Of a stretch of DNA of 64,000 bases, positions 1 through 13,500 are shown piece after piece. The position numbers and the translations under genes are program-made. Position 1 is the stretch's first letter; each line of letters opens with the position of its first letter. Source of the stretch: Piromyces finnis finn (lineage: Eukaryota > Fungi > Neocallimastigomycota); NCBI GenBank assembly GCA_002104945.1, contig MCFH01000007.1, positions 1,183,294-1,247,293 on the forward strand, written 5' to 3'. Below the pieces are notes generated by a model. The model did no database searches and was not told where the DNA came from. It saw nothing but the letters and a program-made list of their open reading frames with translations.

Positions 1-2245
1 TAATTTAATAATTATTTTGAAATAATTGCTTCTATTTTTTTTTTTTTTTTTTGATAAATATAATATAAATTTCTTAATTAATGTTACAACGCTTTTTTAT
101 ATCAATTATTTAAATACTTAAGTAAATATTAAATAATAATTCATTTAAAACTTTTTTCTTTTTTAAAATGAAATGAGTTGATATTGAACTTTCTTAACTT
201 AAAATTTGATATAAAATGAAATAATTGCTTGTGGATTTTACAATTAAAAAATTACTGTTTTGCTTTTGTAGCAATTATTTTTTTATGGTTTAGTTGTGTG
301 ATACGTTAAAAAAATATTAAAAAAAATAACAAAAATTATAAAAATAAAAGTTTTTATTATCAACTATTATAAGAAGGAAAAAATTACAGTTTATTATTAG
401 GATTAATAAAATATTTTTGAATAGTTAATAAAAAAAAATTAATAAAAAAATGGAAAAAAAAACTTAATTTATTAATGAAATAAATTTAATATAAAAAAAT
501 TTTTTTAATTTAATCAAATTAAAAAAAAAGTTATTTTATCAAATTAATAACATATAATAAAATATAATGAAATATGTAATGAAATATATTAAATTTTCAC
601 TTAATTAAGTTATTTAAAAAATAATTAAATTTAAAAATATTAAAATATGAAGTATAAAGAGATTAAATAAAAATATTAAAATGAAATAAAACTTAGTTTT
701 TCATTATATAATGATTAATAATATTTACAATACACTTTTAGATTATAAGCAATAATAAAAATTATATAAAAAATAATAATAGTTAAATTATGTATAATAT
801 TTAATTTATATATATTAATAAGTATGACCATAATTATTATACAATGATTACTTATTCATAACAAGAATAAATTGATTTACTTATAATTTTCTTAATTCTA
901 AAATAAATATTATTTAAAAATACGTATTTCTAATAAGAAATTATTGTATTTTATACTAATAGAAATATTTAAAGAATTTAAATTATTGTTTAATAATGAT
1001 AGATATTATGCATAATTCATATTAAATTAAAGGAAACTAACCTATTTTTATATATTATAAATAGCATAAAAGTATTCAAAAAATGCATAAAATAATAGTT
1101 TTTATTATTCTATAGTTCAAAGCTTTTATTTTATATTTAAATTTTTTATAATTGATAATTTATAAATTTTCTCTGTTATAAATTATAAAAGATATTTATC
1201 TTAATCGATTTTGTATTAAACAAAAAAATTATTTATGTTCTTTAAACTAAACATGAAATAATCTTTAAAGTATTGATTAAATTTAAAATAAATATAGAAA
1301 TAAATATACCAAAATGGCATTATACTTTAAAATACTTGTTATTTACCACATAAAAATATAATATAATTATTTATTATAATAAATATTGTTACACCTCTAT
1401 CATTTTTAATATACATTGAAAATACTATTGATTTAACAAAAAATTATTAAAATTTCACTCAAATTAATTCAATGTAAATATTAAATAATACTTAATAGCT
1501 TTATTACAATAAATTAAATAAGAAATATTATATATTTATTATGAATATTTAACTATTTTATATTAATTTTATTAAAGTAATTTATTAATTAAAAAAGAAG
1601 TATAATATTAGTTATATATTAGCTGTTGTATTTACTATATATTTCTGTTTATATTGAAAAAATGAAATATATTTTGATATTAAAACTTTTAAAACTTTAT
1701 ATTTAATTACAATTTATTTTATTGTTCTAAACTCATAAATATAGATATGGTATTCAATTTAAGACATTTTATTTTTATAATAATTTTTTTTTATTCTTTT
1801 ATTTAATAAATATTCATTAGAACTTTATCCACCATTATCATTATAATTACAACATTTTATATCATTGATACTTTTCAATATAAATGTATTTTCATTATAA
1901 TTAAGATTATATAAGAAAGTTTACATATAATAATTGTTCATATTTCCTAACTAAAAAATATATATATAATAATTATTCAAATCTTTAATATTTAATTAAT
2001 AAAGGCTAATCAATAGCAAAGAATTTCAATTTTCTGTTTTCTAAAAAATCGAAATAATTGAAAAATACATATATTAATATTATATAATATATGTAAAAAA
2101 CAATTTATTTAAATATATAATTAATTTGAATACAATTGATGGTACAATGTATTATACTTTAATATAATCAAATTAATAAACCTTTTTAAATTATTTAATT
2201 ATTACTTTTTTGGAAATTAAATAAATTTTTTATATTAAATTCTAT

Positions 2246-2276
<31 letters not shown>

Positions 2277-3980
2277 TTTTAAATAAGTTACATGAAAAAA
2301 AAATACTAAAGGAATAAATGGATACTTAAATATTTTTATTTTTAAAAAATTAAATAAAATAAGGAATAAAATATAATAGTCACACACACTTTCCTCATAT
2401 CATTTACGTTATAATTTTATTATTATAATTATATATCTTTTTTTTTATTAGAAAAAAAAATTAAGATTAATTATTTTTTGTATAAAGAAAATTTAAAAAT
2501 AATACATATATAAATATTAATATATGTATTATTATTATTCATGAATTAATGCTAAATTAAAACTAATAACCATTAATAGACAACAAAAAAAATGTAAAAT
2601 TTACACTTACTTATTAATTATTAAAAATATATATTCACTAATAAAATTTAAATAGTCTCAATTATAAAAAATAACTAATTCCTACTTTCTAAATAATTTT
2701 AAAATTCAATTTAAAATACAAGATTTTATTGTTTTTTGTTTAACCCAAAGCGAAACATCTACTACTATTATTAGAAGTACATATATTAGATGAGTTAATT
2801 TATTATTGGCACGCCCATTTGAATCTCTACCACTGATAGGTTGAGCCACGGTATTGCACGCCTTCCTCAGTTTTAATAGAGAATTAAATTTATTGCGGAC
2901 AAAATTGTATTTATTTTATCAAAAAATTAAATTTTTATTTCCTTAATCCCAACTTAAAATTACAACTATACTATTGGTTAATAAATATTTTAAATATATA
3001 TGATTGGATAAAAATATAAAGGGTTAAAGAAAATTTTTAAATTCTTAAAATTTAAAAAAAATTGGTTTATTTATATTTATTATTTTGTATTATTAGCTCG
3101 TTTATATAATTCAAAGTATTTTATATATTTATTTATTTATTGTAGTTTCTGTAAAACTGAATTAGTACATTTAATACTTATTATTTATTATTTATTCAAA
3201 AAAAAAAAAAAAAAGAAAAAATTTTAATTATTATCTTTGTAATTAATATTTCATCATGTAATCTTTGTTATATAGTGCGCTAGTTTAAGAAATATAGAGT
3301 TTATTAAATACATAATGAAAACTACAATTAATCGTTTTTATTAATGAATATAAAAAAAAAATAGTTTTTTTTTTGTTGTTTGTAACTATTTCTTACCATC
3401 AAAAGAAATAATAAAATTATGTGTGTATTAAATTTACAATAAAAATTAAAATTTTGTCTCCATTTTCAATAAATAATTGAATTAATATTTTTGTTATTAT
3501 AAAGAAGCAGAATCATTAAATGTTATTTTGAATATGCTGATAAGATGATAAATATAAAAAAAGTAATAATTATTCAATATTTCTAATACAAAAAGGAGTT
3601 AAGGTGTTATTTTATATTTGATAAAAGAATATAGTATAATGAAATAATGGATGTTTTATTTATTAATTAATATATATTTTAAATTTTATATACACTTTTT
3701 TCCATTATAATAATCATAAAATTTATTTAATATTAACAAATTTCTAAAAAAATTAATTTAATAAATAATTATAATAATAAAAAAGAATATTAAAACTAAC
3801 TTGAATTTATAAAATTCAAAAATATAATTTATTTAAAAATATATTATTAAAAAATACATTTCCAATTATATGTTTTTATTTAATTAATACTTTTCTTAAG
3901 TAGTATTAATTTAATAATAATAATAATAATAATAATAGTAATAATAATAATTAAAATATTTTTAATCAAATTAAGAATCC

Positions 3981-4167
3981 ATGGAACAACAATCAGCATC
4001 AACAGAAGTTGTATTGGCAACAGCTGGTTATGATCATACAATTAGATTTTGGGAAGCTTTAAGTGGTATCTGCTTAAGAACTGTTCAACATCCTGATTCT
4101 GTAATATCTTATTATTTATAATTTATGTGAAATAATAAATAGTTATAAATACATAAAATTCTTAATT

Positions 4168-4202
<35 letters not shown>

Positions 4203-6093
4203 CATTTATAATTTATATGCTATTATTTTATAATTGACATTCTTTATATATTTTTGTATATCTATGTTATTATAAATTCTATAGGTAAACAATCATTTAT
4301 TTTTTTTAAAAAATTTGAAAAATAAGATATAGTTATATTAAAATGGATTTCAATAAATTTAATTTTAAAAATGAATATTGAATAAATCATTCAAACAATT
4401 GAATTGTATTTAAAAAGTAATTTTTATTAACAATTATTTATAAAAAAATAAACAACAACAACAACAAACAGGTTTAATTATAATACATATATTGGGCAGT
4501 AGTAATTCAAAAATATCTATAGAAATTAGTTCAATTATATACAAATTATTTAATTATTTTTATACTTAATCATAATTTTTCATTCAGTGTGAGAAAATAT
4601 GTTTTTAATGTTAAAAATTAATCAGAAAGTTCCATGTAATTTTTAAAGGAACAATACAATCTTTTCAAGCATATAAATTCAACAATACTTTAAATAATAA
4701 AAGTTTATACCATTTAGTTGAATATATATTATTTATTATTCCTCTTTAATTTTTTTATATTATTTAGATATTTACTTTAATACAAAATCTAAAATATAAT
4801 TTTTATTTTGAAATTGCAATTTATTAAAAAATTAAGAAAAAAAAGAATGATTATAAAGACGTTTCCACTACCTAAATGAAATAATAAAATAGATTAAATT
4901 CATACAAATTAATATTTTTAATGTTTTTAATTGCCAACATTATATACTAATATATATTAAAATATTGATGATAATAGCAAGTAAATAGATTAGCTATTTC
5001 CCCTGATAAAAGATATTTAGCAGCAGCTGGTATTACTTATATTTTAATATATATAATAGTTATAAAATTTTTAAATACTAACAATTATGTTATATTTACT
5101 TGAATATTGTTGTGAAGGTAATCCACATGTTCGTTTATACGAAGTCCAAACAAATAATCCAAATCCAGTACGTTTTAATTTTCAATTGTTAAATTTTCAT
5201 TTTTTTGAATTAAAATAAATAATTTTCAATATTTTGTTTTTACCTTTCTTAATTTAATTAATAAAAGGTTGTTAATTTTGATGGACATACTGGTAATGTA
5301 ACTGCTATTGCATATCAATCTGCAGGTAGATGGATTGTTACAGGTAGTGAAGATGGCACTATAAAGATTTGGGATGTTAGGTAATTTTATTATTATAATT
5401 ATTATTTTAATTAAATATTAATGTATATAATAATTTTAAAATAATAAAAAAAAAATAATAGAGCACCAGGGGTTCAAAGAGATTATGAATTAAAAGTACC
5501 TGTTAATGATGTTATTATTCATCCTAATCAAGGTGAACTTGTTTCTTGTGATCAAAGTGGTTCCATAAAGGTTTGGGATTTAAGTGAAAATCTATGTACT
5601 CATGAATTAGTAAGTTTTAATGTGGTATTTTTGATGTAATAATAATTAAACTACTCAATATTTAAATATTTTAAGCAAATGATATATACTTAAATTTTGT
5701 GATTTTAACCACATTTTTATAGTTACCAGAGGAAGATGTTCCAGCTCGTTCTGTATCTATGGCAGCTGATGGTTCTATGCTAATTTGTAGTAATAATAAG
5801 GTAATTATTAATGTTATTATTTTAGAAATTTAAATATATACATCAAATAATATTTTTATATATTATTATTAAGACAAATTAATAATATATAAATTATCTA
5901 TATTTAATATATTTATTAGGGTAATTTTTATGTATGGAAAATGAAAGAAAAAGGTGATTTAACTGAACTTGAAGCAGTTCAAAAAGTTAACGCTCATAGT
6001 AAATATATCACAAAATGTGTATTAAGTCCAGATACAAGGTAATTTTTAGTTTTTCTAGTTAAGTAAATAGAACAATAAAATCAAAAAAATATG

Positions 6094-6125
<32 letters not shown>

Positions 6126-6566
6126 TATCATTATATATATTAATGTTGTATTTTATTTTTGATAATTATTATAAATTGATTAAAAAAAATTTTTTTTTCT
6201 ACATTATTACTATAGATCATTAGCAACATGTAGTGCAGATAATACTGTTAAAATATGGGAAAATGTTAATAATGATGGTCAATTTTCTTTAACAAAAAAA
6301 TTAGTTGGTCATCAAAGATGGGTTTGGGATTGCTCATTTTCTGCTGATTCAGCTTATTTAATAACAGGTAAATTATATATAAATAGGCAAATAATATAAT
6401 AATTATAGAATATATATTATATTTATTTTAATTTTTATTTTTATTAATAGGATCATCTGATCACACAGCAAGATTATGGGATTTAAATACTTCTGAAACT
6501 ATTCGAACCTATAATGGACATCAAAAGGCAGTCGTTTGTGTTGCCTTACATGATGTTAGTTTATAG
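3981..6566 (+). CDS. LST8: TOR complex subunit LST8 (WD40), 9 coding exons, all GT-AG introns
   Basis: Manual splicing gives [40 protein letters not shown]|[18 protein letters not shown]|NPHVRLYE...[33 protein letters not shown]...[31 protein letters not shown]...[12 protein letters not shown], the characteristic LST8 sequence. Exon 1 is 3981-4100, exon 2 is 4978-5029 and the last exon ends with TAG at 6564-6566. Confidence 0.96.
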
Positions 6567-7840
6567 GTATTACTTAATAATATTTATAAATATATCTTTT
6601 TTATATTATAATTTTTAATAATCTTAAATTTTAAATTAAAATAAAAGTTTAATATACCATTATTATTTTAAATAATAATAATTTTTTTTGAAAAATTATA
6701 AATATATTTTATTTTAATTAGGATTATTTATTAAAATATTATTTGATTCATTTAAAATTTTTCAAAACAAAGAAAAAAAAAATTAATTATACCTTTTATT
6801 TTTTATCTAAACTTTAATGTACAAACAAACAAACAAACAAACAAACAAATAAATAAATAAGTAAATAAATAAATAAATAAATAAATGTTTAATAAAAGTT
6901 ATGTTATTATATTGGTTTTATTATTTATATTTAATTTTGTCAACTTTAATATTGCTAAGTAAGGGTTAAAATTTATTATTTGTTAAAGTAGTATAAATTT
7001 ATATGTATTTAAATATTTAAAATATGGCTTCCGTAATAAATTTAAATATGTGACAAGTACTTATATAAATATTAAAATATTAATTTTTAAATTATAAGTA
7101 TTTCACTTATAAAAAGATAAATACTAATCTTCATGTTCTAACTAACGATAGCGTTATATATTAACTTCTTTAATGATAAGGATCTTATTTGTATTCTAAA
7201 GTATTCTCTTACTTGGTGAATAGTTATCCAAAAATATGGAACAAAAATAAATGATTTAACAAAATAAACATGAACAAATATGATATAAAAAATAAAAAGA
7301 ATAAAATAGTTATTATAATATATTTGTTATATTTGTTTGCTCATTTATATCATTTTTTATATTTATTAATTAATCAAAAAATATTATATTAAATTTTGTT
7401 AAATGTTAGCAAAAAATTTCCATTAATATTTAATAATATTTTATTGTTAGCAACTATTATTTTATTTAATAATTTCTTCTTTTAAAATAGAAACAATACT
7501 ATTATAATTCAATGAGGAAATAATGCATCTAGATTAACAAAAATTGCTGTTATATTTTTTAATTAATAATTATAATTTTATAATATAAATTTATTAAAAT
7601 CTTCAAATGAATTTTTTTTTTTAAAAAAAGTTATTTAGAAAAAATATCTTTATATCTTTATATCTTTATATATAAATAAATAAATAAATTTATTTTCAAA
7701 AAAAAAAAAAAAAAAAAAATAAAATATAAAATATATATAATAAAAATCATAAAAATACAAGTTTCTATAAAAGAAAGAAGAAGAATTAAATAATAAAATT
7801 GTAAAAGTTAAAAATTTTAACATTTTTATTTTACATAAAT

Positions 7841-8096
7841 ATGAATCAAATGTTATCTACATTTTCAAATTCAAATACTTTTAGATCTAATATATCGCAG
7901 TTAACTTTAAGTTCATTTTCAACTCTTATTAAAAATATAGTTAATTCCAATTGTATTAGTAAAATAAATATTCATAAAAGAAATTACATTTATTTTAAAT
8001 GTAATACTTCTTGGAACAATAATTTAAGAGAAAATAAATTTAATTCCTTTTATATTAATAAGAAATTATTTTCATTTAAAAATAATATTCATTCAG
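7841..8096 (+). CDS. Probable upstream coding exon of the dipeptidase gene, encoding an 85-aa organellar-presequence-like peptide
   Basis: The ORF from ATG 7841 has a CAG|GTAACT donor at 8096/8097 (phase 1). This matches in phase an AAG|GT acceptor at 8615/8616 inside the dipeptidase ORF, with CTAAT at 8602-8606. The peptide has 11 K/R, 1 E, no D and many Ser/Asn. Confidence 0.5.
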
Positions 8097-8608
8097 GTAA
8101 CTTTTATGATATATTTAATATCCCTGTTTTTTTTTATAATAAATATTTTTATTAGTTATAACCTTATGAAAATAAGTTGCTATATTAATATCTATTATAT
8201 TGTAAAAGAAACATATATTTATTCATAATAAAAAAAATAACTTTTTTTATTTAAAATGGTTTTAACATTTATTTGAAATATATTAGAAATTCAAAATATA
8301 TATTATAATTGTTTATATATATGTAAACAACAATATTATTACTAATGTATTACAATGATATATAACAATTATCAAAATAATGATATTTAGTTATTTATGC
8401 CAATACATTTAAAAAAAGTGATAAAGTGACAATTTTATTTTTTTAAATGACTATTTTAATATAATTTTCACTACTCTTTATTTAACTATTTAATTTGTGA
8501 TTGGTTTAATTTCCTAATATATGAAATTTTAAAAATTTAAAATTTAAAAATAATATAAATTAAATTCAAAAGTTAATTTATTCATATAATTTTTAAATTT
8601 TCTAATAA

Positions 8609-10090
8609 ATGGAAGGTTCAAAGAGAGCTTCTTGTACTACAATTCTTGTAGGAAAAAATGCCACCTATGATGGTTCTACAATGATGGCTCGTACTGAAGA
8701 TTCAAGTGCTGGAAATTTTTGTTCAAAAAAACATATTGTTGTAAAACCTTCTGAGCAACCTCGTCATTATAAATCCGTTTTGTCAAAATTTGAGATAGAT
8801 CTTCCAGAAGACCCACTTCAATATACTGCAATGCCAAATGCAAATCCAAAGGATGGCATTTGGGGTGAAGCAGGAATAAATACTAAAAATGTAGCCGTAT
8901 CTGAAACAGAAACAATCACTTCGAATGCATTAGTATTAGGTGCAGATCCATTAGTTGAAACTGGTATTGGTGAAGAGGATATATTAACAATAACTTTACC
9001 TTACATTGATTCAGCAAGAAAAGGTGTCGAAAGACTTGGCTCAATATTAGCTAAATATGGTACATACGAAATGAATGGAATTGGATTCCAGGATGAAAAT
9101 GAAATATGGTGGCTTGAAACTATTGGTGGTCATCATTTTATTGCAAAGAGAGTGCCAGATGATTCCTATGTTGTTGGTCCAAATCAACAAGGAATAAAAA
9201 CATTCGATTTTGTCGATGCTTATGGAGAAAAAAAGAATCATATTTGTTCAAGTGATTTGGTTGAATTTATCGTTAATAATAAATTAGATTTATCATTTAA
9301 TTCATCTAAAAACTTGAAATGCGAAAGAAATTTTGATGTTAGAGCTGCACTAGGAAGTCATACAGATTTTGATAAAGTGTATAATACCCCAAGAGCATGG
9401 TTTATGCATAAATATTTAAGTCCAAAAAAATATAAATGGGAAGGTCCAAATTCAGAATTCACACCAGAAAGTCTTGATTTACCATGGTCTTTAGTTCCAG
9501 ATCATAAAATAACTGTTGATGATATTAAATATCTTATGTCATCCCACTATCAAGGTACTAAATTCAATCCATATGGAAAGTATGGTGATTTGTCAGAAGC
9601 TGGGAAATATAGACCTATTGGTATTAATAGAACCAATTTTGTAACACTTACTCAAATAAGAAGATATATGCCAGACGAAATCAAATCTCTTGAATGGATT
9701 GCTGTTGGTTCTTGTATTTTTAATGCTTTTATGCCTCAATATTCAAGAGTTAATGATTCTCCAAAATATATTAAAGAAGTCACTGATGAAGTTACTACTG
9801 AAAATTTCTACTGGATCAATAGAATTATTGCTGCTTTAGCTGATACTCATTATAGTGATGTAATGGTATGGATTGAAAGATATCAGAAAAAAATAGCTGC
9901 TAAAGGTCATGAATTTATTAATAAATATGATAAACAATATCAAGAAGGAAATATTTCAAAGACATTTTTAGATGATGCTAACAATGAAATCGCAAATTTT
10001 GTTAAAAAAGAAACTTCTGACCTTTTAGGAAAAGTATTATATACTTCAAGTTTAAAAATGAAAAATGCATTTTCAAGATCAGATGCTTAA
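8609..10090 (+). CDS. pepD: Dipeptidase, peptidase family C69 (PepD/PepDA-like Ntn hydrolase), bacterial type
   Basis: Motifs CTTILVGKNATYDGSTMMARTED (N-terminal Cys nucleophile), GIWGEAGIN, ETETIT, GIGEED, YGTYEMNG, WLETIGGHH, YNTPRAW, SSHYQGT and RPIGINR match the Lactobacillus PepDA family. No intron in the 493-codon body. Confidence 0.93.
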   Translation: MEGSKRASCTTILVGKNATYDGSTMMARTEDSSAGNFCSKKHIVVKPSEQPRHYKSVLSKFEIDLPEDPLQYTAMPNANPKDGIWGEAGINTKNVAVSETETITSNALVLGADPLVETGIGEEDILTITLPYIDSARKGVERLGSILAKYGTYEMNGIGFQDENEIWWLETIGGHHFIAKRVPDDSYVVGPNQQGIKTFDFVDAYGEKKNHICSSDLVEFIVNNKLDLSFNSSKNLKCERNFDVRAALGSHTDFDKVYNTPRAWFMHKYLSPKKYKWEGPNSEFTPESLDLPWSLVPDHKITVDDIKYLMSSHYQGTKFNPYGKYGDLSEAGKYRPIGINRTNFVTLTQIRRYMPDEIKSLEWIAVGSCIFNAFMPQYSRVNDSPKYIKEVTDEVTTENFYWINRIIAALADTHYSDVMVWIERYQKKIAAKGHEFINKYDKQYQEGNISKTFLDDANNEIANFVKKETSDLLGKVLYTSSLKMKNAFSRSDA

Positions 10091-10504
10091 ACGAATAATA
10101 TTCATTTTAAAAATTCTATTGTTAATATGATATATTTATATACAAAATAATAAAATCATAAAAATTAACATAATATAAATATTATTAGCAATACTATTAA
10201 AGAATTATTATAAATAAATTATAATAATCAAAGTAAATTTATAATATTTAATAAGTAGAAAAGAACATAATTAATAAAAAACTTTATTTTTAATTATTAG
10301 AATTATGTATATTTTTCTGTTAATTTTATTATTATTTTATATTTTAAAATATATAAAAAATTAAAGTAAAAAATTATAAATAATCCTGTTATTTAAAATT
10401 TTGTATTATAAAATTTAATTTACTAATTTTAGTTATGTATATACTGTTCTTATTAAAAAAAAAATATTAATATATAAACATAACTTATTTTATAATAATA
10501 TTAT

Positions 10505-13500
10505 TTAATTTTTGGAAAAAATCCTCATAATATTATTTAAATTGAAATATTGATTATAAAAATTAACATATTCGTTTATACTTTTCAATTCATCATCATT
10601 ATATATTTCTATTTTTTTTGAAGTACAATTACATATGTATGAATTATGTAAGATGCATTTTGTATTTGGAATATTTATAAAATATTTATATCTAGTATTC
10701 CCATTTTTGGAATGAATCATATATATAATATATGAAAAGTAACCAAAAAATATAATGAAGCAACTTACAAAATTTGAATAAAATTGAATTATTTGTGAAG
10801 TTCCCAAATTATTTTTAAATAGTGTATATAATGTAATCTATAATTTTTAGTATACATAAATGAAAATGATAATAGATATAATTTTGTTATGTATAATTTG
10901 AAAAAAAAAAAAAAAAAAAGAATCAATATAACTAATATATTAATATTATAAATAGTATAATTTATAAAAACTTTACATTAAGAATTGGCTCAAAGAATAT
11001 CCATATAATACATAAAATACCTATTATTTTACAGTCAACAAAGATATATCTTCCATTACTAATCAACTGATATTTTAAAATATCATAAATTAAAAATATA
11101 AATTGAACTATAGTCATTAAAAACATAATATAATTGGATGGACATATGTGATGAAAATAATTGTTTATCATGAGTTCACTAGATAAAGATTTATTCCGTG
11201 CAATAATATAATATACTATTGATGGTATTAAATATAGAATAAAAGAAATATATGTTGTTATAATATTATAGTAACATAATCTCAACATTTTCTCAAACTT
11301 GTTTTTTATCTTATCTTTTTTAAAATTAAAATTAAAAGGTGTTAATGGATTTAATAATAATTCATTAACTTTTTCATTTGAATTACATTGATTTGGATAA
11401 AGATTACTATATGAATCACAATAACCTTGATTAACATTATTATTTGAATTATGCTGATTTAAATTAAGATTACAATTTGAATTATGATTTAAATTATTGT
11501 ATTGTAATGTTGATAAATGGGATTGAGAACCATTTGCATTAGACATTATTTGAGAACCATATATATTTTCATATGAAACATTACTTTCTACTCTTGATGG
11601 TAAATTATCGGTACTACTTCTATTATTATTTTTATTTCCAATTTTTTTATTTGAAATGATATCTTTATGACAACAATTTTCATTACTAGCAAAACCTTTA
11701 AAATTATTTTTAATTACAGAACTTAATTTATTTTTATTTGAGAAAAACAAATTTTCACATATTTGAGTAGAAAGTATATTGTTTAAAAGAATATAATCTA
11801 CTCTTCCAGAATTGAATTTAATAGTGAAAGTGGAAGCAATTATTAATTTTATTGTGAAAGGTGTATATATTAATAAGAACCCAATAGATAACAAAAGAAA
11901 TTGTAAAAAACAATTACTTATACTATTTGATATTATATAAAAGTTACTGAAATTTTTTATAATACATCCCATAGATATGGAAATCATGGACACTAATCCG
12001 AAATCTTTTATTATTAAAACATTAGCATTAGATAATATATATAAAGTAGAAATTGCCATGATTATACTACTTGTAATTGTAATAACTTTAAATATATTTT
12101 CATAATGACTATTTAGTATTATTAATAGAAAATAAGGAAATTAGAAAGAAATATATACTTTAAAACAATTTTAAAAATTATAATATTTTAAAAATTACTT
12201 TTCTGGTCCATAATCCAATGTGAGACAGTCATTTCCTGTATATCCTGCAAGGCATACACATACATTAATATTCGGATCATTGACATTCATATGAATATTT
12301 TCAGGTTTTATACATTTCTTATTACCAATTAAACAATTATCATTACAATTTGGAAGTTCACATGTATAAAAATTATTGCTATCAATAACTTTAATACTGT
12401 CTCTACTACAATCATTAATTTTTAATTTAATATTTAAATAAGTTTCCTTCAAAATATTTAATGTATTATTTTTAGCTTTTATCTTTAAATAATAATATCC
12501 AGCATCTTTACATAACACTTGTAAAAAATTAATATTGTTTTTACCTATTTTTTATTTAAGAAAAATTAATATTTTATTCATATCTATTTAAAATTCTTTA
12601 TTATTATATGTATGATAAGCAATTACCTCTATTAAAAATATTTTCAGAAGTAACAATTGAGTAATTAGGAACTTTTTCATTCCTATCATAATCATATAAC
12701 TCTATGGTGATTCCAATATCAGAATAAAATTTTTCTAAATCTTCAACAATATTATTTAATTTATCTTTAAGAATTATTGAAAAAGATGTTGTTTCTCCAG
12801 AGTATATTTCAATTCCATTTTTGATTTCATTATTAGTTAAACCACCTATATTATTTGAATTTTCAATTTCAAATTGAGTAGGATGTGTTGCAAAATCAGG
12901 TCCATGAGAATTAGCTTTATTATTTTTAAATTCATTTTCATTTGATTTCATTTTCAATAAATTATGAATGTAATATATTCTATCATTAGGTTGTTCAAAA
13001 AAAAATACACCACCTGCAACTCCAACTGAATTATTAAAGAATTTATTTTTTCTTATATCTAAATTATATTGGAATTCTATTCTATTATTAATAAATGCAA
13101 CACCTCCAAAATAACCAGCTTTATTATATTCAAAATTTGATTCTATTATTGATATTGATTTTTGATATTTATATTCATTACTAGTATCTTCATTTAAATA
13201 GAGAATAGTACCTTTACTGTGACATATATTTGAAGTAAATATTGAATTATTTATATAAATATTATTATTTTTTGTATCATTAAAAAAGCTAAGTCAAATT
13301 AAAAGAGAATTTATTATAATAAAAAATATATGAAAGTAATAAAATTTAGTATATATAATATAGTTTTGTTAATTAAATCAAAAAAATTTTATTTACAAGA
13401 TTCCAGATGAGTATGATTCATTGTTCATGAATTCAGAATAATCTATATTAATATTTATATTATTTGCCATTGATATAAATCCGTAATCATTTTTACTTCC

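What the first reader, a model, noticed from the sequence alone, without database searches (positions are those of the whole stretch)
7841..8640. Horizontally acquired peptidase appears to have gained a spliced hydrogenosome/mitochondrion-type targeting exon, with a second ATG allowing a cytosolic form
Seen: exon 7841-8096 ends at CAG|GTAACT in phase 1, and an AAG|GT acceptor at 8615/8616, preceded by CTAAT, rejoins the dipeptidase in frame. The product is ...KNNIHS-G-SKRAS-CTTILVG (576 aa). The 85-aa extension (MNQMLSTFSNSNTFRS...) has 11 basic residues, one acidic residue and abundant Ser, like an organellar presequence, and an Arg lies 3 residues before the catalytic Cys. The dipeptidase's own ATG (8609) lies inside the 3' end of this intron. 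Inference: alternative start or splicing could make both a hydrogenosomal and a cytosolic enzyme from one bacterial gene, perhaps to clear peptides in the organelle.
Basis: partly seen in the sequence, partly recalled or inferred. Interest (0 to 1): 0.75.

Follow-up and report, generated by a model that had tools for sequence, protein, structure and literature searches.

The report
Added upstream exon on transferred dipeptidase
A bacterial-type dipeptidase gene in an anaerobic gut fungus has an extra upstream exon, and RNA from a sister genus shows it spliced onto the enzyme as an ~80-residue N-terminal tail that may send one of two enzyme forms into the hydrogenosome.

Summary
An 85-codon open frame (7841-8096) ends at CAG|GTAACT in phase 1. 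An AG at 8614-8615, 7 nt into the dipeptidase's own ORF, rejoins the frame to give 576 aa.

It is not chance. The same exon, with an invariant TTCATTCAG|GTA donor and an in-frame acceptor, lies upstream of the orthologous C69 dipeptidase in three other anaerobic-fungus genomes. The frame would stay open by neutral drift in only about 0.2-0.4% of cases.

In the Neocallimastix-type orthologue, at least 24 transcript contigs from many samples encode a 572-aa protein. Ten were fetched, and all lack exactly the predicted intron. A second species shows the same junction.

The short form is also supported. The ATG inside the intron is kept in frame in all four species. A CCAAT-type block is conserved in the intron. 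One contig from an RNA sample reads through the ATG unspliced.

Public gene models show only the 493-aa form.

Not shown:
- Hydrogenosomal import. The tail is acid-poor, Ser/Thr-rich and predicted unstructured, and resembles this genome's hydrogenase presequence. But it is three times longer than known ones, and its charge is what AT-rich DNA gives by default.

This is a new member of a known kind.

The parts
7841..8096 (+). Exon 1, coding part (85 codons + 1 nt, phase 1). It encodes the N-terminal extension of the long form. A second ATG at 7850 aligns with the start codon of the orthologues.
   Evidence: Orthologous ORFs were found in L001, L109 and L113. Invariant columns by codon position are 39/39/23 of 75 (Fisher p=0.003). 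The exon is present in spliced transcripts of the L109-type species.
7976..7987 (+). K-R-N-Y codons, conserved as [K/N]-R-N-Y in all four species. This is a candidate R-2/R-3 processing-peptidase site (inferred).
   Evidence: Alignment. No acidic residue lies upstream of it in any of the four species.
8097..8615 (+). GT-AG intron of the long form, 519 nt, GC 0.13. It contains the short form's promoter region and start codon.
   Evidence: The homologous intron (L109:717-1505) is absent from ten transcript contigs.
8097..8102 (+). 5' splice site GTAACT, preceded by exonic TTCATTCAG.
   Evidence: TTCATTCAGGTA is invariant in four species, the longest invariant run of the exon alignment. Verified LST8 introns in this window use GTAATA, GTATTA, GTACGT, GTAATT and GTAAGT.
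8498..8517 (+). Conserved inverted-CCAAT-type block TGATTGGTT...TTCC, 111 nt upstream of the internal ATG. It is the inferred core of the proximal promoter for the short form.
   Evidence: TGATTGG(C/T)T occurs once in each species' intron, at -111, -218, -238 and -258 from the ATG, in introns of 7-13% GC.
8602..8606 (+). CTAAT, a branch-point-like motif 10 nt before the acceptor AG.
   Evidence: CTAAT and TTAAT-like motifs precede the acceptors of LST8 introns. Not tested functionally.
8609..8611 (+). ATG of the 493-aa short form, lying inside the long form's intron.
   Evidence: It is kept in all four species, and the extra ATG codon in L113 is in frame. Every other eukaryote-type homologue starts here. 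Contig L005 from an RNA sample reads through it.
8614..8615 (+). 3' splice-site AG. It is the first AG after the branch-like motif and is in frame for a phase-1 junction.
   Evidence: The homologous AG (+7 from the ATG) is the one used in L109-type and L001-type transcripts.
8616..10090 (+). Exon 2: the C69 dipeptidase body including the TAA stop. There is no further intron.
   Evidence: Pfam PF03577 E=1e-163. PDB dipeptidase 5IAU E=6e-120. GC 0.31.
8633..8635 (+). Codon of the catalytic, N-terminal-nucleophile Cys in the CTTILVGK motif.
   Evidence: Invariant in 35 homologues. It aligns with the Cys of the solved dipeptidase. The first strand of the confident fold starts there in the model of the long form.

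Best explanation
One gene makes two proteins from two promoters.

Long form. A distal promoter upstream of 7841 gives an mRNA in which exon 1 (7841-8096) is spliced to 8616. This encodes a 576-aa precursor. Its first 85 residues are an unstructured, acid-poor, Ser/Asn/Lys-rich extension placed in front of a C69 dipeptidase acquired from bacteria.

Short form. A proximal promoter inside the 519-nt intron, marked by the CCAAT-type block at 8498, gives an intronless mRNA. Translation starts at ATG 8609 and yields the ancestral 493-aa, presumably cytosolic, enzyme.

In both forms the residues before Cys (codon 8633-8635) must be removed to expose the N-terminal nucleophile. An N-terminal add-on is therefore compatible with activity.

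What the extension does. Most likely it is a mitochondrial-type matrix-targeting presequence of about 45 residues ending at the conserved K-R-N-Y, followed by a linker. This would deliver part of the enzyme to the hydrogenosome. The exon probably arose from local AT-rich noncoding DNA, not by copying another gene's presequence.

Shown:
- The exon, intron and frame in this window.
- Conservation of these features in four species.
- Exact splicing in two orthologous species.

Inferred, with my odds:
- Splicing in this species: about 0.85.
- Use of both starts: about 0.65.
- Hydrogenosomal destination: about 0.5.
For: Anatomy.

Conservation:
- A profile of the exon found small ORFs of 106, 87 and 88 aa. 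Each lies 570-760 nt upstream of a C69 gene on the same strand.
- Exon lengths are 256, 241, 244 and 238 nt, all phase 1. Length differences are multiples of 3.
- After the donor the frame stops after 18, 25, 5 and 8 codons.
- Third codon positions are least conserved (Fisher p=0.003).
- Neutral substitution at the observed 33-39% divergence keeps the frame open in 0.2-0.4% of trials.

Splicing:
- P0127 (572 aa) reads ...KFNFHS-E-SKIASC, which is exon 1 joined to the peptidase.
- At least 24 contigs from JGI samples and one SRA run carry it.
- The ten fetched contigs align to genomic L109 as two blocks ending at 716 and starting at 1504. One contig ends in a run of A at a point where the genome reads on with other bases.
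- P0134 (MKFHSEESKIASC) shows the same junction in the L001-type species.

Short form:
- The ATG and the frame between it and the acceptor are kept in all four species.
- A conserved TGATTGG(C/T)T block lies in each intron.
- L005, from a sample that also holds a spliced mRNA contig (L122), carries 104 nt of intron sequence followed by the ATG.
- All other eukaryote-type homologues are 490-496 aa with their own ATG.

Targeting-like features:
- No acidic residue before K-R-N-Y in any of the four species.
- Ser+Thr fraction is 0.22-0.29 in three of four, against a null mean of 0.07.
- The starts (MSISNLPSFK..., MLTSFSNS...) resemble this genome's hydrogenase N-terminus MSSISNVLNK....
- This genome's succinyl-CoA synthetase beta presequence ends KRF.
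- Residues 1-83 of the long form have pLDDT 25-32, so there is no sign of a folded domain.

Origin: the exon has no paralogue in the 56-Mb genome, and its GC (0.17) is close to that of the noncoding DNA.
Against:
- Four probable RNA runs of this organism hold only 0.54-0.55 of the sampled words of 7600-10300. That equals the share of the 493-codon ORF alone. It may mean exon 1 is weakly expressed there, but UTR words are missing too, so the figure is ambiguous.
- The extension is 80-85 aa, whereas the presequences seen in this genome are about 27 aa.
- Its basic and acidic content equals what translated AT-rich DNA gives by default. Its helical hydrophobic moment (0.34-0.41) is at the null mean of 0.38.
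- No localisation predictor or proteome data were available. Two papers' texts and supplements do not mention this enzyme.
- L005 could be retained-intron RNA instead of a transcript from an internal promoter, and its first 65 nt are unexplained.
Confidence: 0.6

Rival explanations
1. The long spliced form is real, but the extension is not an organellar address. It could be a pro-peptide that delays or regulates autocatalytic exposure of the nucleophile Cys, a signal for another compartment, or a weakly constrained leader whose main role is translational control.
For: - The extension is three times longer than the presequences found in this genome.
- Its charge and hydrophobic moment are at the composition null.
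- C69 enzymes must in any case shed what precedes the Cys.
- Exon 1 evolves nearly as fast as synonymous sites: 61-71% nt identity against 59-74%.
Against: - Ser/Thr enrichment, total lack of acidic residues before a conserved [K/N]-R-N-Y, and an ML/MS...S...K start like the hydrogenase presequence.
- No hydrophobic core of the kind a secretion signal has.
- No predicted fold.
Confidence: 0.27
2. In this species the upstream frame is not joined to the peptidase. It would be a separate small gene, or a decaying relic of the arrangement still used in Neocallimastix, and only the 493-aa intronless enzyme is made.
For: - The public model of this genome is 493 aa, with sources NCBI, UniRef and EukProt.
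- The four runs hold a word share equal to the ORF alone.
- No long-form protein of this species is on record.
Against: - The frame is intact over 85 codons despite about 35% divergence. Donor CAG|GTA, branch-like CTAAT and the in-frame first AG are all intact.
- As a separate gene its C-terminus would be unconserved, with stops at +5 to +25 codons.
- The 493-aa public models of N. californiae and N. lanati also miss the long form that transcripts prove.
Confidence: 0.1
3. The long form is the only functional mRNA. The ATG at 8609 would be a leftover of the bacterial start, and the short ORFs in databases come from gene callers and unspliced RNA.
For: - Spliced contigs are numerous, at least 24.
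- L005 may be retained-intron RNA.
Against: - The ATG and the frame behind it are kept inside a fast-diverging intron in four species, including an in-frame 3-nt insertion.
- A conserved CCAAT-type block lies in the intron.
- Lineages without room for an upstream exon use only this start.
Confidence: 0.08

Closest known systems
Bacterial C69 dipeptidases (PepD / dipeptidase A type; solved 'Dipeptidase' chains 5IAU, 5IMH, 5IMG)
   Same: Full-length Pfam PF03577 match. E=6e-120 to 5IAU over residues 3-490, with the Cys-Thr-(Thr/Ser)-Ile-Leu-Val-Gly-Lys nucleophile motif after a short leader. 60-65% identity to Lachnospiraceae-like proteins.
   Different: It is encoded in a eukaryote. An added upstream exon and a spliceosomal intron overlap its start codon. 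The closest bacterial relatives start MPC..., while the eukaryote clade has M-x6-C.
N-terminal presequences of anaerobic-fungal hydrogenosomal matrix enzymes (here: succinyl-CoA synthetase beta and [FeFe]-hydrogenase of the same genome)
   Same: N-terminal, acid-free, hydroxyl-rich and basic. It starts ML/MS...S, and a basic-x-aromatic motif (KRNY against KRF) lies near a plausible cleavage point.
   Different: 80-85 aa instead of about 27. Rich in Asn/Ile/Phe where the known presequences are Ala-rich. No amphipathic signal above null. Import is untested.
Dual localisation by alternative transcription starts and two in-frame ATGs, as in yeast HTS1, VAS1 and LEU4 (my own knowledge, not checked here)
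   Same: One gene; the upstream start adds a targeting peptide and the downstream start gives the cytosolic protein.
   Different: Here the upstream start is in a separate exon. The downstream ATG sits inside the intron, 7 nt before the acceptor, so splicing and the choice of start are mutually exclusive.
Presequence gain by exon recruitment after organelle-to-nucleus gene transfer in plants (my own knowledge, not checked here)
   Same: A transferred, originally intronless coding region receives its targeting peptide as a separate upstream exon joined by an intron.
   Different: The donor here is a bacterium, not an organelle. The exon has no detectable parent gene in the genome. The untargeted form is retained.

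Membership tests
Peptidase family C69 (Ntn-type cysteine dipeptidase) | Full-length match to the family profile | tested here: met
   PF03577, E=1e-163, profile positions 1-401 of 402. Single copy in the genome.
Peptidase family C69 (Ntn-type cysteine dipeptidase) | Nucleophile Cys close to the N-terminus in a conserved motif | tested here: met
   The Cys of CTTILVGK is invariant in 35 homologues. It aligns to the Cys of 5IAU and starts the first strand of the confident fold.
Peptidase family C69 (Ntn-type cysteine dipeptidase) | Dipeptidase activity and autocatalytic removal of the leader | not testable with these tools
   Needs enzyme assay and N-terminal sequencing.
Spliceosomal GT-AG intron | GT donor, AG acceptor and branch-like motif matching this genome's verified introns | tested here: met
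   GTAACT ... CTAAT ... AG. LST8 introns in the window have GTA(A/T/C)NT donors and lengths of 81-877 nt.
Spliceosomal GT-AG intron | Removal shown by comparing transcript with genome | tested here: inconclusive
   Met for the homologous intron in the L109-type species (ten contigs) and the L001-type species (P0134). Not tested in this species.
Mitochondrial-type (hydrogenosomal) matrix-targeting presequence | N-terminal position, no acidic residues, net positive charge | tested here: inconclusive
   0 D/E and 5-6 K/R in the first 44-49 residues of all four species. The composition null gives 5.7 basic residues and P(no acid)=0.30 per sequence.
Mitochondrial-type (hydrogenosomal) matrix-targeting presequence | Enrichment in hydroxylated residues | tested here: met
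   Ser+Thr 0.22-0.29 in three of four species (0.11 in the fourth), against a null mean of 0.07. P(>=0.22)=0.001.
Mitochondrial-type (hydrogenosomal) matrix-targeting presequence | Amphipathic helix | tested here: not met
   Maximum hydrophobic moment 0.34-0.41, against null 0.38 +/- 0.10. This genome's succinyl-CoA synthetase beta presequence gives 0.48. This is a crude measure.
Mitochondrial-type (hydrogenosomal) matrix-targeting presequence | Arg at -2/-3 of a processing site | tested here: inconclusive
   [K/N]-R-N-Y is conserved in four species. Cleavage there is inferred only.
Mitochondrial-type (hydrogenosomal) matrix-targeting presequence | Import into the organelle | not testable with these tools
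   No predictor or proteome at hand. The supplements of the hydrogenosome proteomics paper are not held.
Dual-isoform gene with alternative first exon or promoter | Two in-frame start codons giving proteins that differ only at the N-terminus | tested here: met
   ATG 7841 (576 aa after splicing) and ATG 8609 (493 aa).
Dual-isoform gene with alternative first exon or promoter | Transcripts of both kinds | tested here: inconclusive
   Spliced form. Unspliced form with 104 nt of intron before the ATG, in an RNA sample: L005. Both come from orthologues, and an internal start cannot be told from a retained intron.

The most novel reading that the evidence does not exclude
An anaerobic fungus built a working hydrogenosomal address for a bacterial dipeptidase from its own AT-rich noncoding DNA. 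The new exon is spliced into the 7th nucleotide of the old ORF, so the same gene still makes the cytosolic enzyme from a promoter inside the new intron. This would be a clean, datable case of de novo presequence birth on a horizontally transferred gene, older than the split between this lineage and Neocallimastix. It would also mean that fungal hydrogenosomes carry out terminal peptide breakdown with a borrowed bacterial enzyme.
Probability: 0.4. Interest if true: 0.72.

Novelty: new member of a known kind. Interest (0 to 1): 0.58.

Why it matters
- It shows step by step how a gene taken from bacteria can be fitted with a new N-terminal module in a eukaryote: a new exon, a new intron, and a retained old start.
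- It shows that the public gene models of at least three anaerobic-fungus genomes miss the longer isoform, which transcripts prove in one of them.
- If the tail is a hydrogenosomal address, it adds a peptide-degrading step to the inventory of this reduced mitochondrion.
- It would also be a natural example of a targeting peptide born from AT-rich noncoding sequence, which is basic and acid-poor by default.

Tried and rejected
- **Read laying on 7000-10700.** A ORF listing over 1-7700 still covered 7681-7700; all later references to the upstream flank stopped at 7680 or started at 7753 or later.
- **Word shares of runs X1-X4 (0.54-0.55).** They equal the ORF's share of the stretch. UTR words are missing as well, so I do not count this for or against exon 1 expression.
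- **Exact look-up of the 493-aa protein.** Not on record.
- **Word-based search with the 104-aa ORF.** No hit.
- **Region search with the long form.** It returns only cluster representatives, so no further long forms were visible.
- **blastn and tblastx of the upstream regions.** Swamped by low-complexity matches.
- **Exon paralogues in the own genome.** None, so exon shuffling from another presequence is unsupported.
- **Other eukaryote-type clusters at 83% identity or less.** No long members among those read. Their loci have neighbouring genes 160-560 nt upstream, leaving no room for the exon.
- **Charge composition and hydrophobic moment as evidence for targeting.** Rejected, because both sit at the null.
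Not conserved.
- **Papers and supplements on anaerobic-fungal HGT and hydrogenosome content.** No mention of this enzyme.
- **Organism identity.** A search to confirm it as Piromyces finnis from assembly statistics found nothing. That name rests on my memory of a 56.46 Mb, 232-scaffold assembly.
- **Bacterial contigs from human-gut metagenomes.** Returned and not used.
Full report
**1. What is in the sequence**

The window is extremely AT-rich. The ORF 8609-10090 (493 aa, GC 0.31) is a full-length family C69 peptidase. It matches Pfam PF03577 at E=1e-163 and solved 'Dipeptidase' chains such as 5IAU at E=6e-120. It is single-copy in the 56.46-Mb, 232-contig assembly.

- An ATG at 7841 opens an 85-codon frame that ends attcag|GTAACT at 8096/8097, in phase 1.
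- CTAAT lies at 8602-8606.
- The first following AG (8614-8615) is 7 nt into the peptidase ORF and restores the frame.
- The joined CDS is 1731 nt, or 576 aa, and reads ...NNIHS-G-SKRAS-C.
- The peptidase's own ATG (8609) lies in the last 7 nt of the 519-nt intron, right after an in-frame TAA.

**2. Is it more than chance?**

Only 16 ORFs of 85 aa or more exist in the window. This one has the lowest GC of them. No ORF longer than 57 aa occurs in the 7.7 kb upstream. Simulated noncoding DNA gives an ORF of 104 aa or more in 3% of 64-kb runs, and an ORF of 85 aa or more in 0.16% of 1-kb runs.

Verified introns of the LST8 gene in the same window have donors GTAATA, GTATTA, GTACGT, GTAATT and GTAAGT, and lengths of 81-877 nt. 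The proposed signals and intron length are therefore normal for this genome.

**3. Comparative evidence**

A genomic contig of a related species (L001, peptidase 88% identical) has a 106-aa ORF at the same place. A profile of the two exons, searched against 1.84 billion proteins, found two more small ORFs of 87 and 88 aa. Each lies upstream of a C69 gene on the same strand (L109 and L113).

The L109 peptidase is identical to the annotated Neocallimastix californiae and N. lanati protein.

In all four species:
- The exon ends TTCATTCAG|GTA. This is the longest invariant run of the exon alignment and includes three synonymous positions.
- The exon is in phase 1 (256, 241, 244 and 238 nt).
- Length differences are multiples of 3.
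- The frame closes at variable distances after the donor (+18, +25, +5 and +8 codons).
- The first AG after the peptidase ATG is in frame.

Amino-acid identity between the exons is only 40-56%. Third codon positions are the least conserved, with 39/39/23 invariant of 75 (Fisher p=0.003). Random substitution at the observed divergence keeps the frame open in 0.2-0.4% of trials. The exon is therefore a translated, weakly constrained coding exon.

**4. Direct proof of splicing in orthologues**

The 90%-identity cluster of the orthologues contains P0127, 572 aa. Its sequence is the 87-aa ORF up to ...KFNFHS, then Glu, then SKIASC and the rest of the peptidase. That is exactly the predicted junction, CAG|..AG|AG.

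It is carried by at least 24 contigs of 2.1-2.7 kb, from many JGI samples and one SRA run.

The ten fetched contigs align to genomic L109 in two blocks, one ending at 716 and the other starting at 1504. This removes the 789-nt intron. The contigs have 5' leaders of 53-132 nt and a 3' UTR of about 375 nt. One ends in a run of A at a point where the genome reads on with other bases.

P0134 (MKFHSEESKIASC...) shows the homologous junction in the L001-type species, and P0128 is a 5'-truncated copy of the same form.

The NCBI models for N. californiae and N. lanati, and the public model of the window's own genome, are the 493-aa short form.

**5. The short form**

All other eukaryote-type homologues (66-83% identical, hundreds of cluster members) are 490-496 aa with their own ATG and an M-x6-C leader. 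The nearest bacterial sequences start MPC.

In a maximum-likelihood tree the eukaryote-type sequences form one clade (support 100/100) next to Lachnospiraceae-like sequences. This fits one transfer from bacteria.

More distant members have neighbouring genes 160-560 nt upstream, so the stand-alone gene is the ancestral state.

In the four exon-bearing species the ATG is retained inside an otherwise fast-diverging intron. The codons between it and the acceptor stay in frame, including a 3-nt insertion in L113.

Each intron holds one TGATTGG(C/T)T block, an inverted CCAAT box, at -111 to -258 from the ATG.

Contig L005 comes from a sample that also holds a spliced mRNA contig (L122). It carries 104 nt of intron sequence followed by the ATG and the whole ORF. 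This supports a transcript that starts in the intron. A retained intron is not excluded, and the contig's first 65 nt match nothing.

**6. What the extension is**

It has no Pfam match and no paralogue in the genome. Its GC (0.17) is close to that of noncoding DNA. Origin from local noncoding DNA is the simplest reading.

In a model of the 572-aa form, residues 1-83 have pLDDT 25-32, and the confident fold begins at the Cys. The alignment is shallow over that part.

Features like a matrix-targeting presequence:
- No acidic residue before a conserved [K/N]-R-N-Y in any species.
- Ser+Thr of 0.22-0.29 in three of four species, against 0.07 expected.
- Starts such as MSISNLPSFK and MLTSFSNS, which resemble this genome's hydrogenase N-terminus MSSISNVLNK. 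The succinyl-CoA synthetase beta presequence of this genome ends KRF.

Against it:
- The extension is 80-85 aa, against about 27 for those presequences.
- Its basic and acidic content is what AT-rich DNA yields anyway.
- Its hydrophobic moment is not above the null.

Localisation therefore remains an inference, at about even odds.

**7. What could not be done**

One ORF listing (1-7700) still covered 7681-7700.

Four probable RNA runs of this organism hold 0.54-0.55 of the sampled words of 7600-10300. This equals the ORF's share, but UTR words are missing as well. I treat it as ambiguous, at most a hint that exon 1 is not abundant in those samples.

**8. Verdict**

The splice prediction is validated by orthologous cDNA and by conservation. 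The two-start architecture is well supported comparatively. The hydrogenosomal destination is plausible but unproven.

In kind, this combines two known phenomena: presequence gain through an added exon, and dual isoforms from alternative starts. Here they occur on a bacterial-origin peptidase in anaerobic fungi. I found no description of it in the papers searched, and the public 493-aa models lack it.

Noticed in passing
window 3981-6563 (+): An LST8-like WD40 gene with at least 8 introns; the first is 877 nt and the rest are 81-177 nt. I used it as the local reference for splice signals.
   Followed up: partly
L126 (own genome, contig C156, minus strand): The hydrogenosomal succinyl-CoA synthetase beta presequence is itself split by an intron: MLANVTRSTSKAAPAL / ASIAQTAQKRF-LSVHEY. 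Presequence-coding first exons therefore occur in bona fide organelle genes of this genome too.
   Followed up: partly
P0075 (545 aa, ENA contig of 1951 nt): A eukaryote-type C69 homologue (67% identical) has a different 64-residue N-terminal extension with a hydrophobic, signal-peptide-like start. It may be a secreted paralogue that gained another kind of address.
   Followed up: no
L007-L010, L099-L101, L011-L014, L104-L107: In rumen contigs, eukaryote-type C69 genes sit next to M1 (LTA4-hydrolase-like) or M20 peptidase genes, with short spacers and apparently no introns. This is a recurring peptidase neighbourhood whose host organisms are unidentified.
   Followed up: no
L005:1-65: The first 65 nt of this RNA-sample contig match nothing in the genomic loci and join at an A-rich run. 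This is probably an assembly chimera, but an unrecognised 5' exon is not excluded.
   Followed up: partly
L115:1-589: The SRA-derived spliced contig carries 589 nt, including a 182-aa ORF, upstream of the part that aligns to genomic L109. This is either a chimera or a longer 5' structure.
   Followed up: no
window 10962-12059 (-): A 365-aa Asn-rich ORF with hydrophobic segments lies downstream on the opposite strand. It was not examined.
   Followed up: no
P0129 and P0036 (Piromyces sp. E2): That genome has two C69 genes. One falls in the exon-bearing cluster and one in a separate clade, whereas the window's genome shows a single copy.
   Followed up: no
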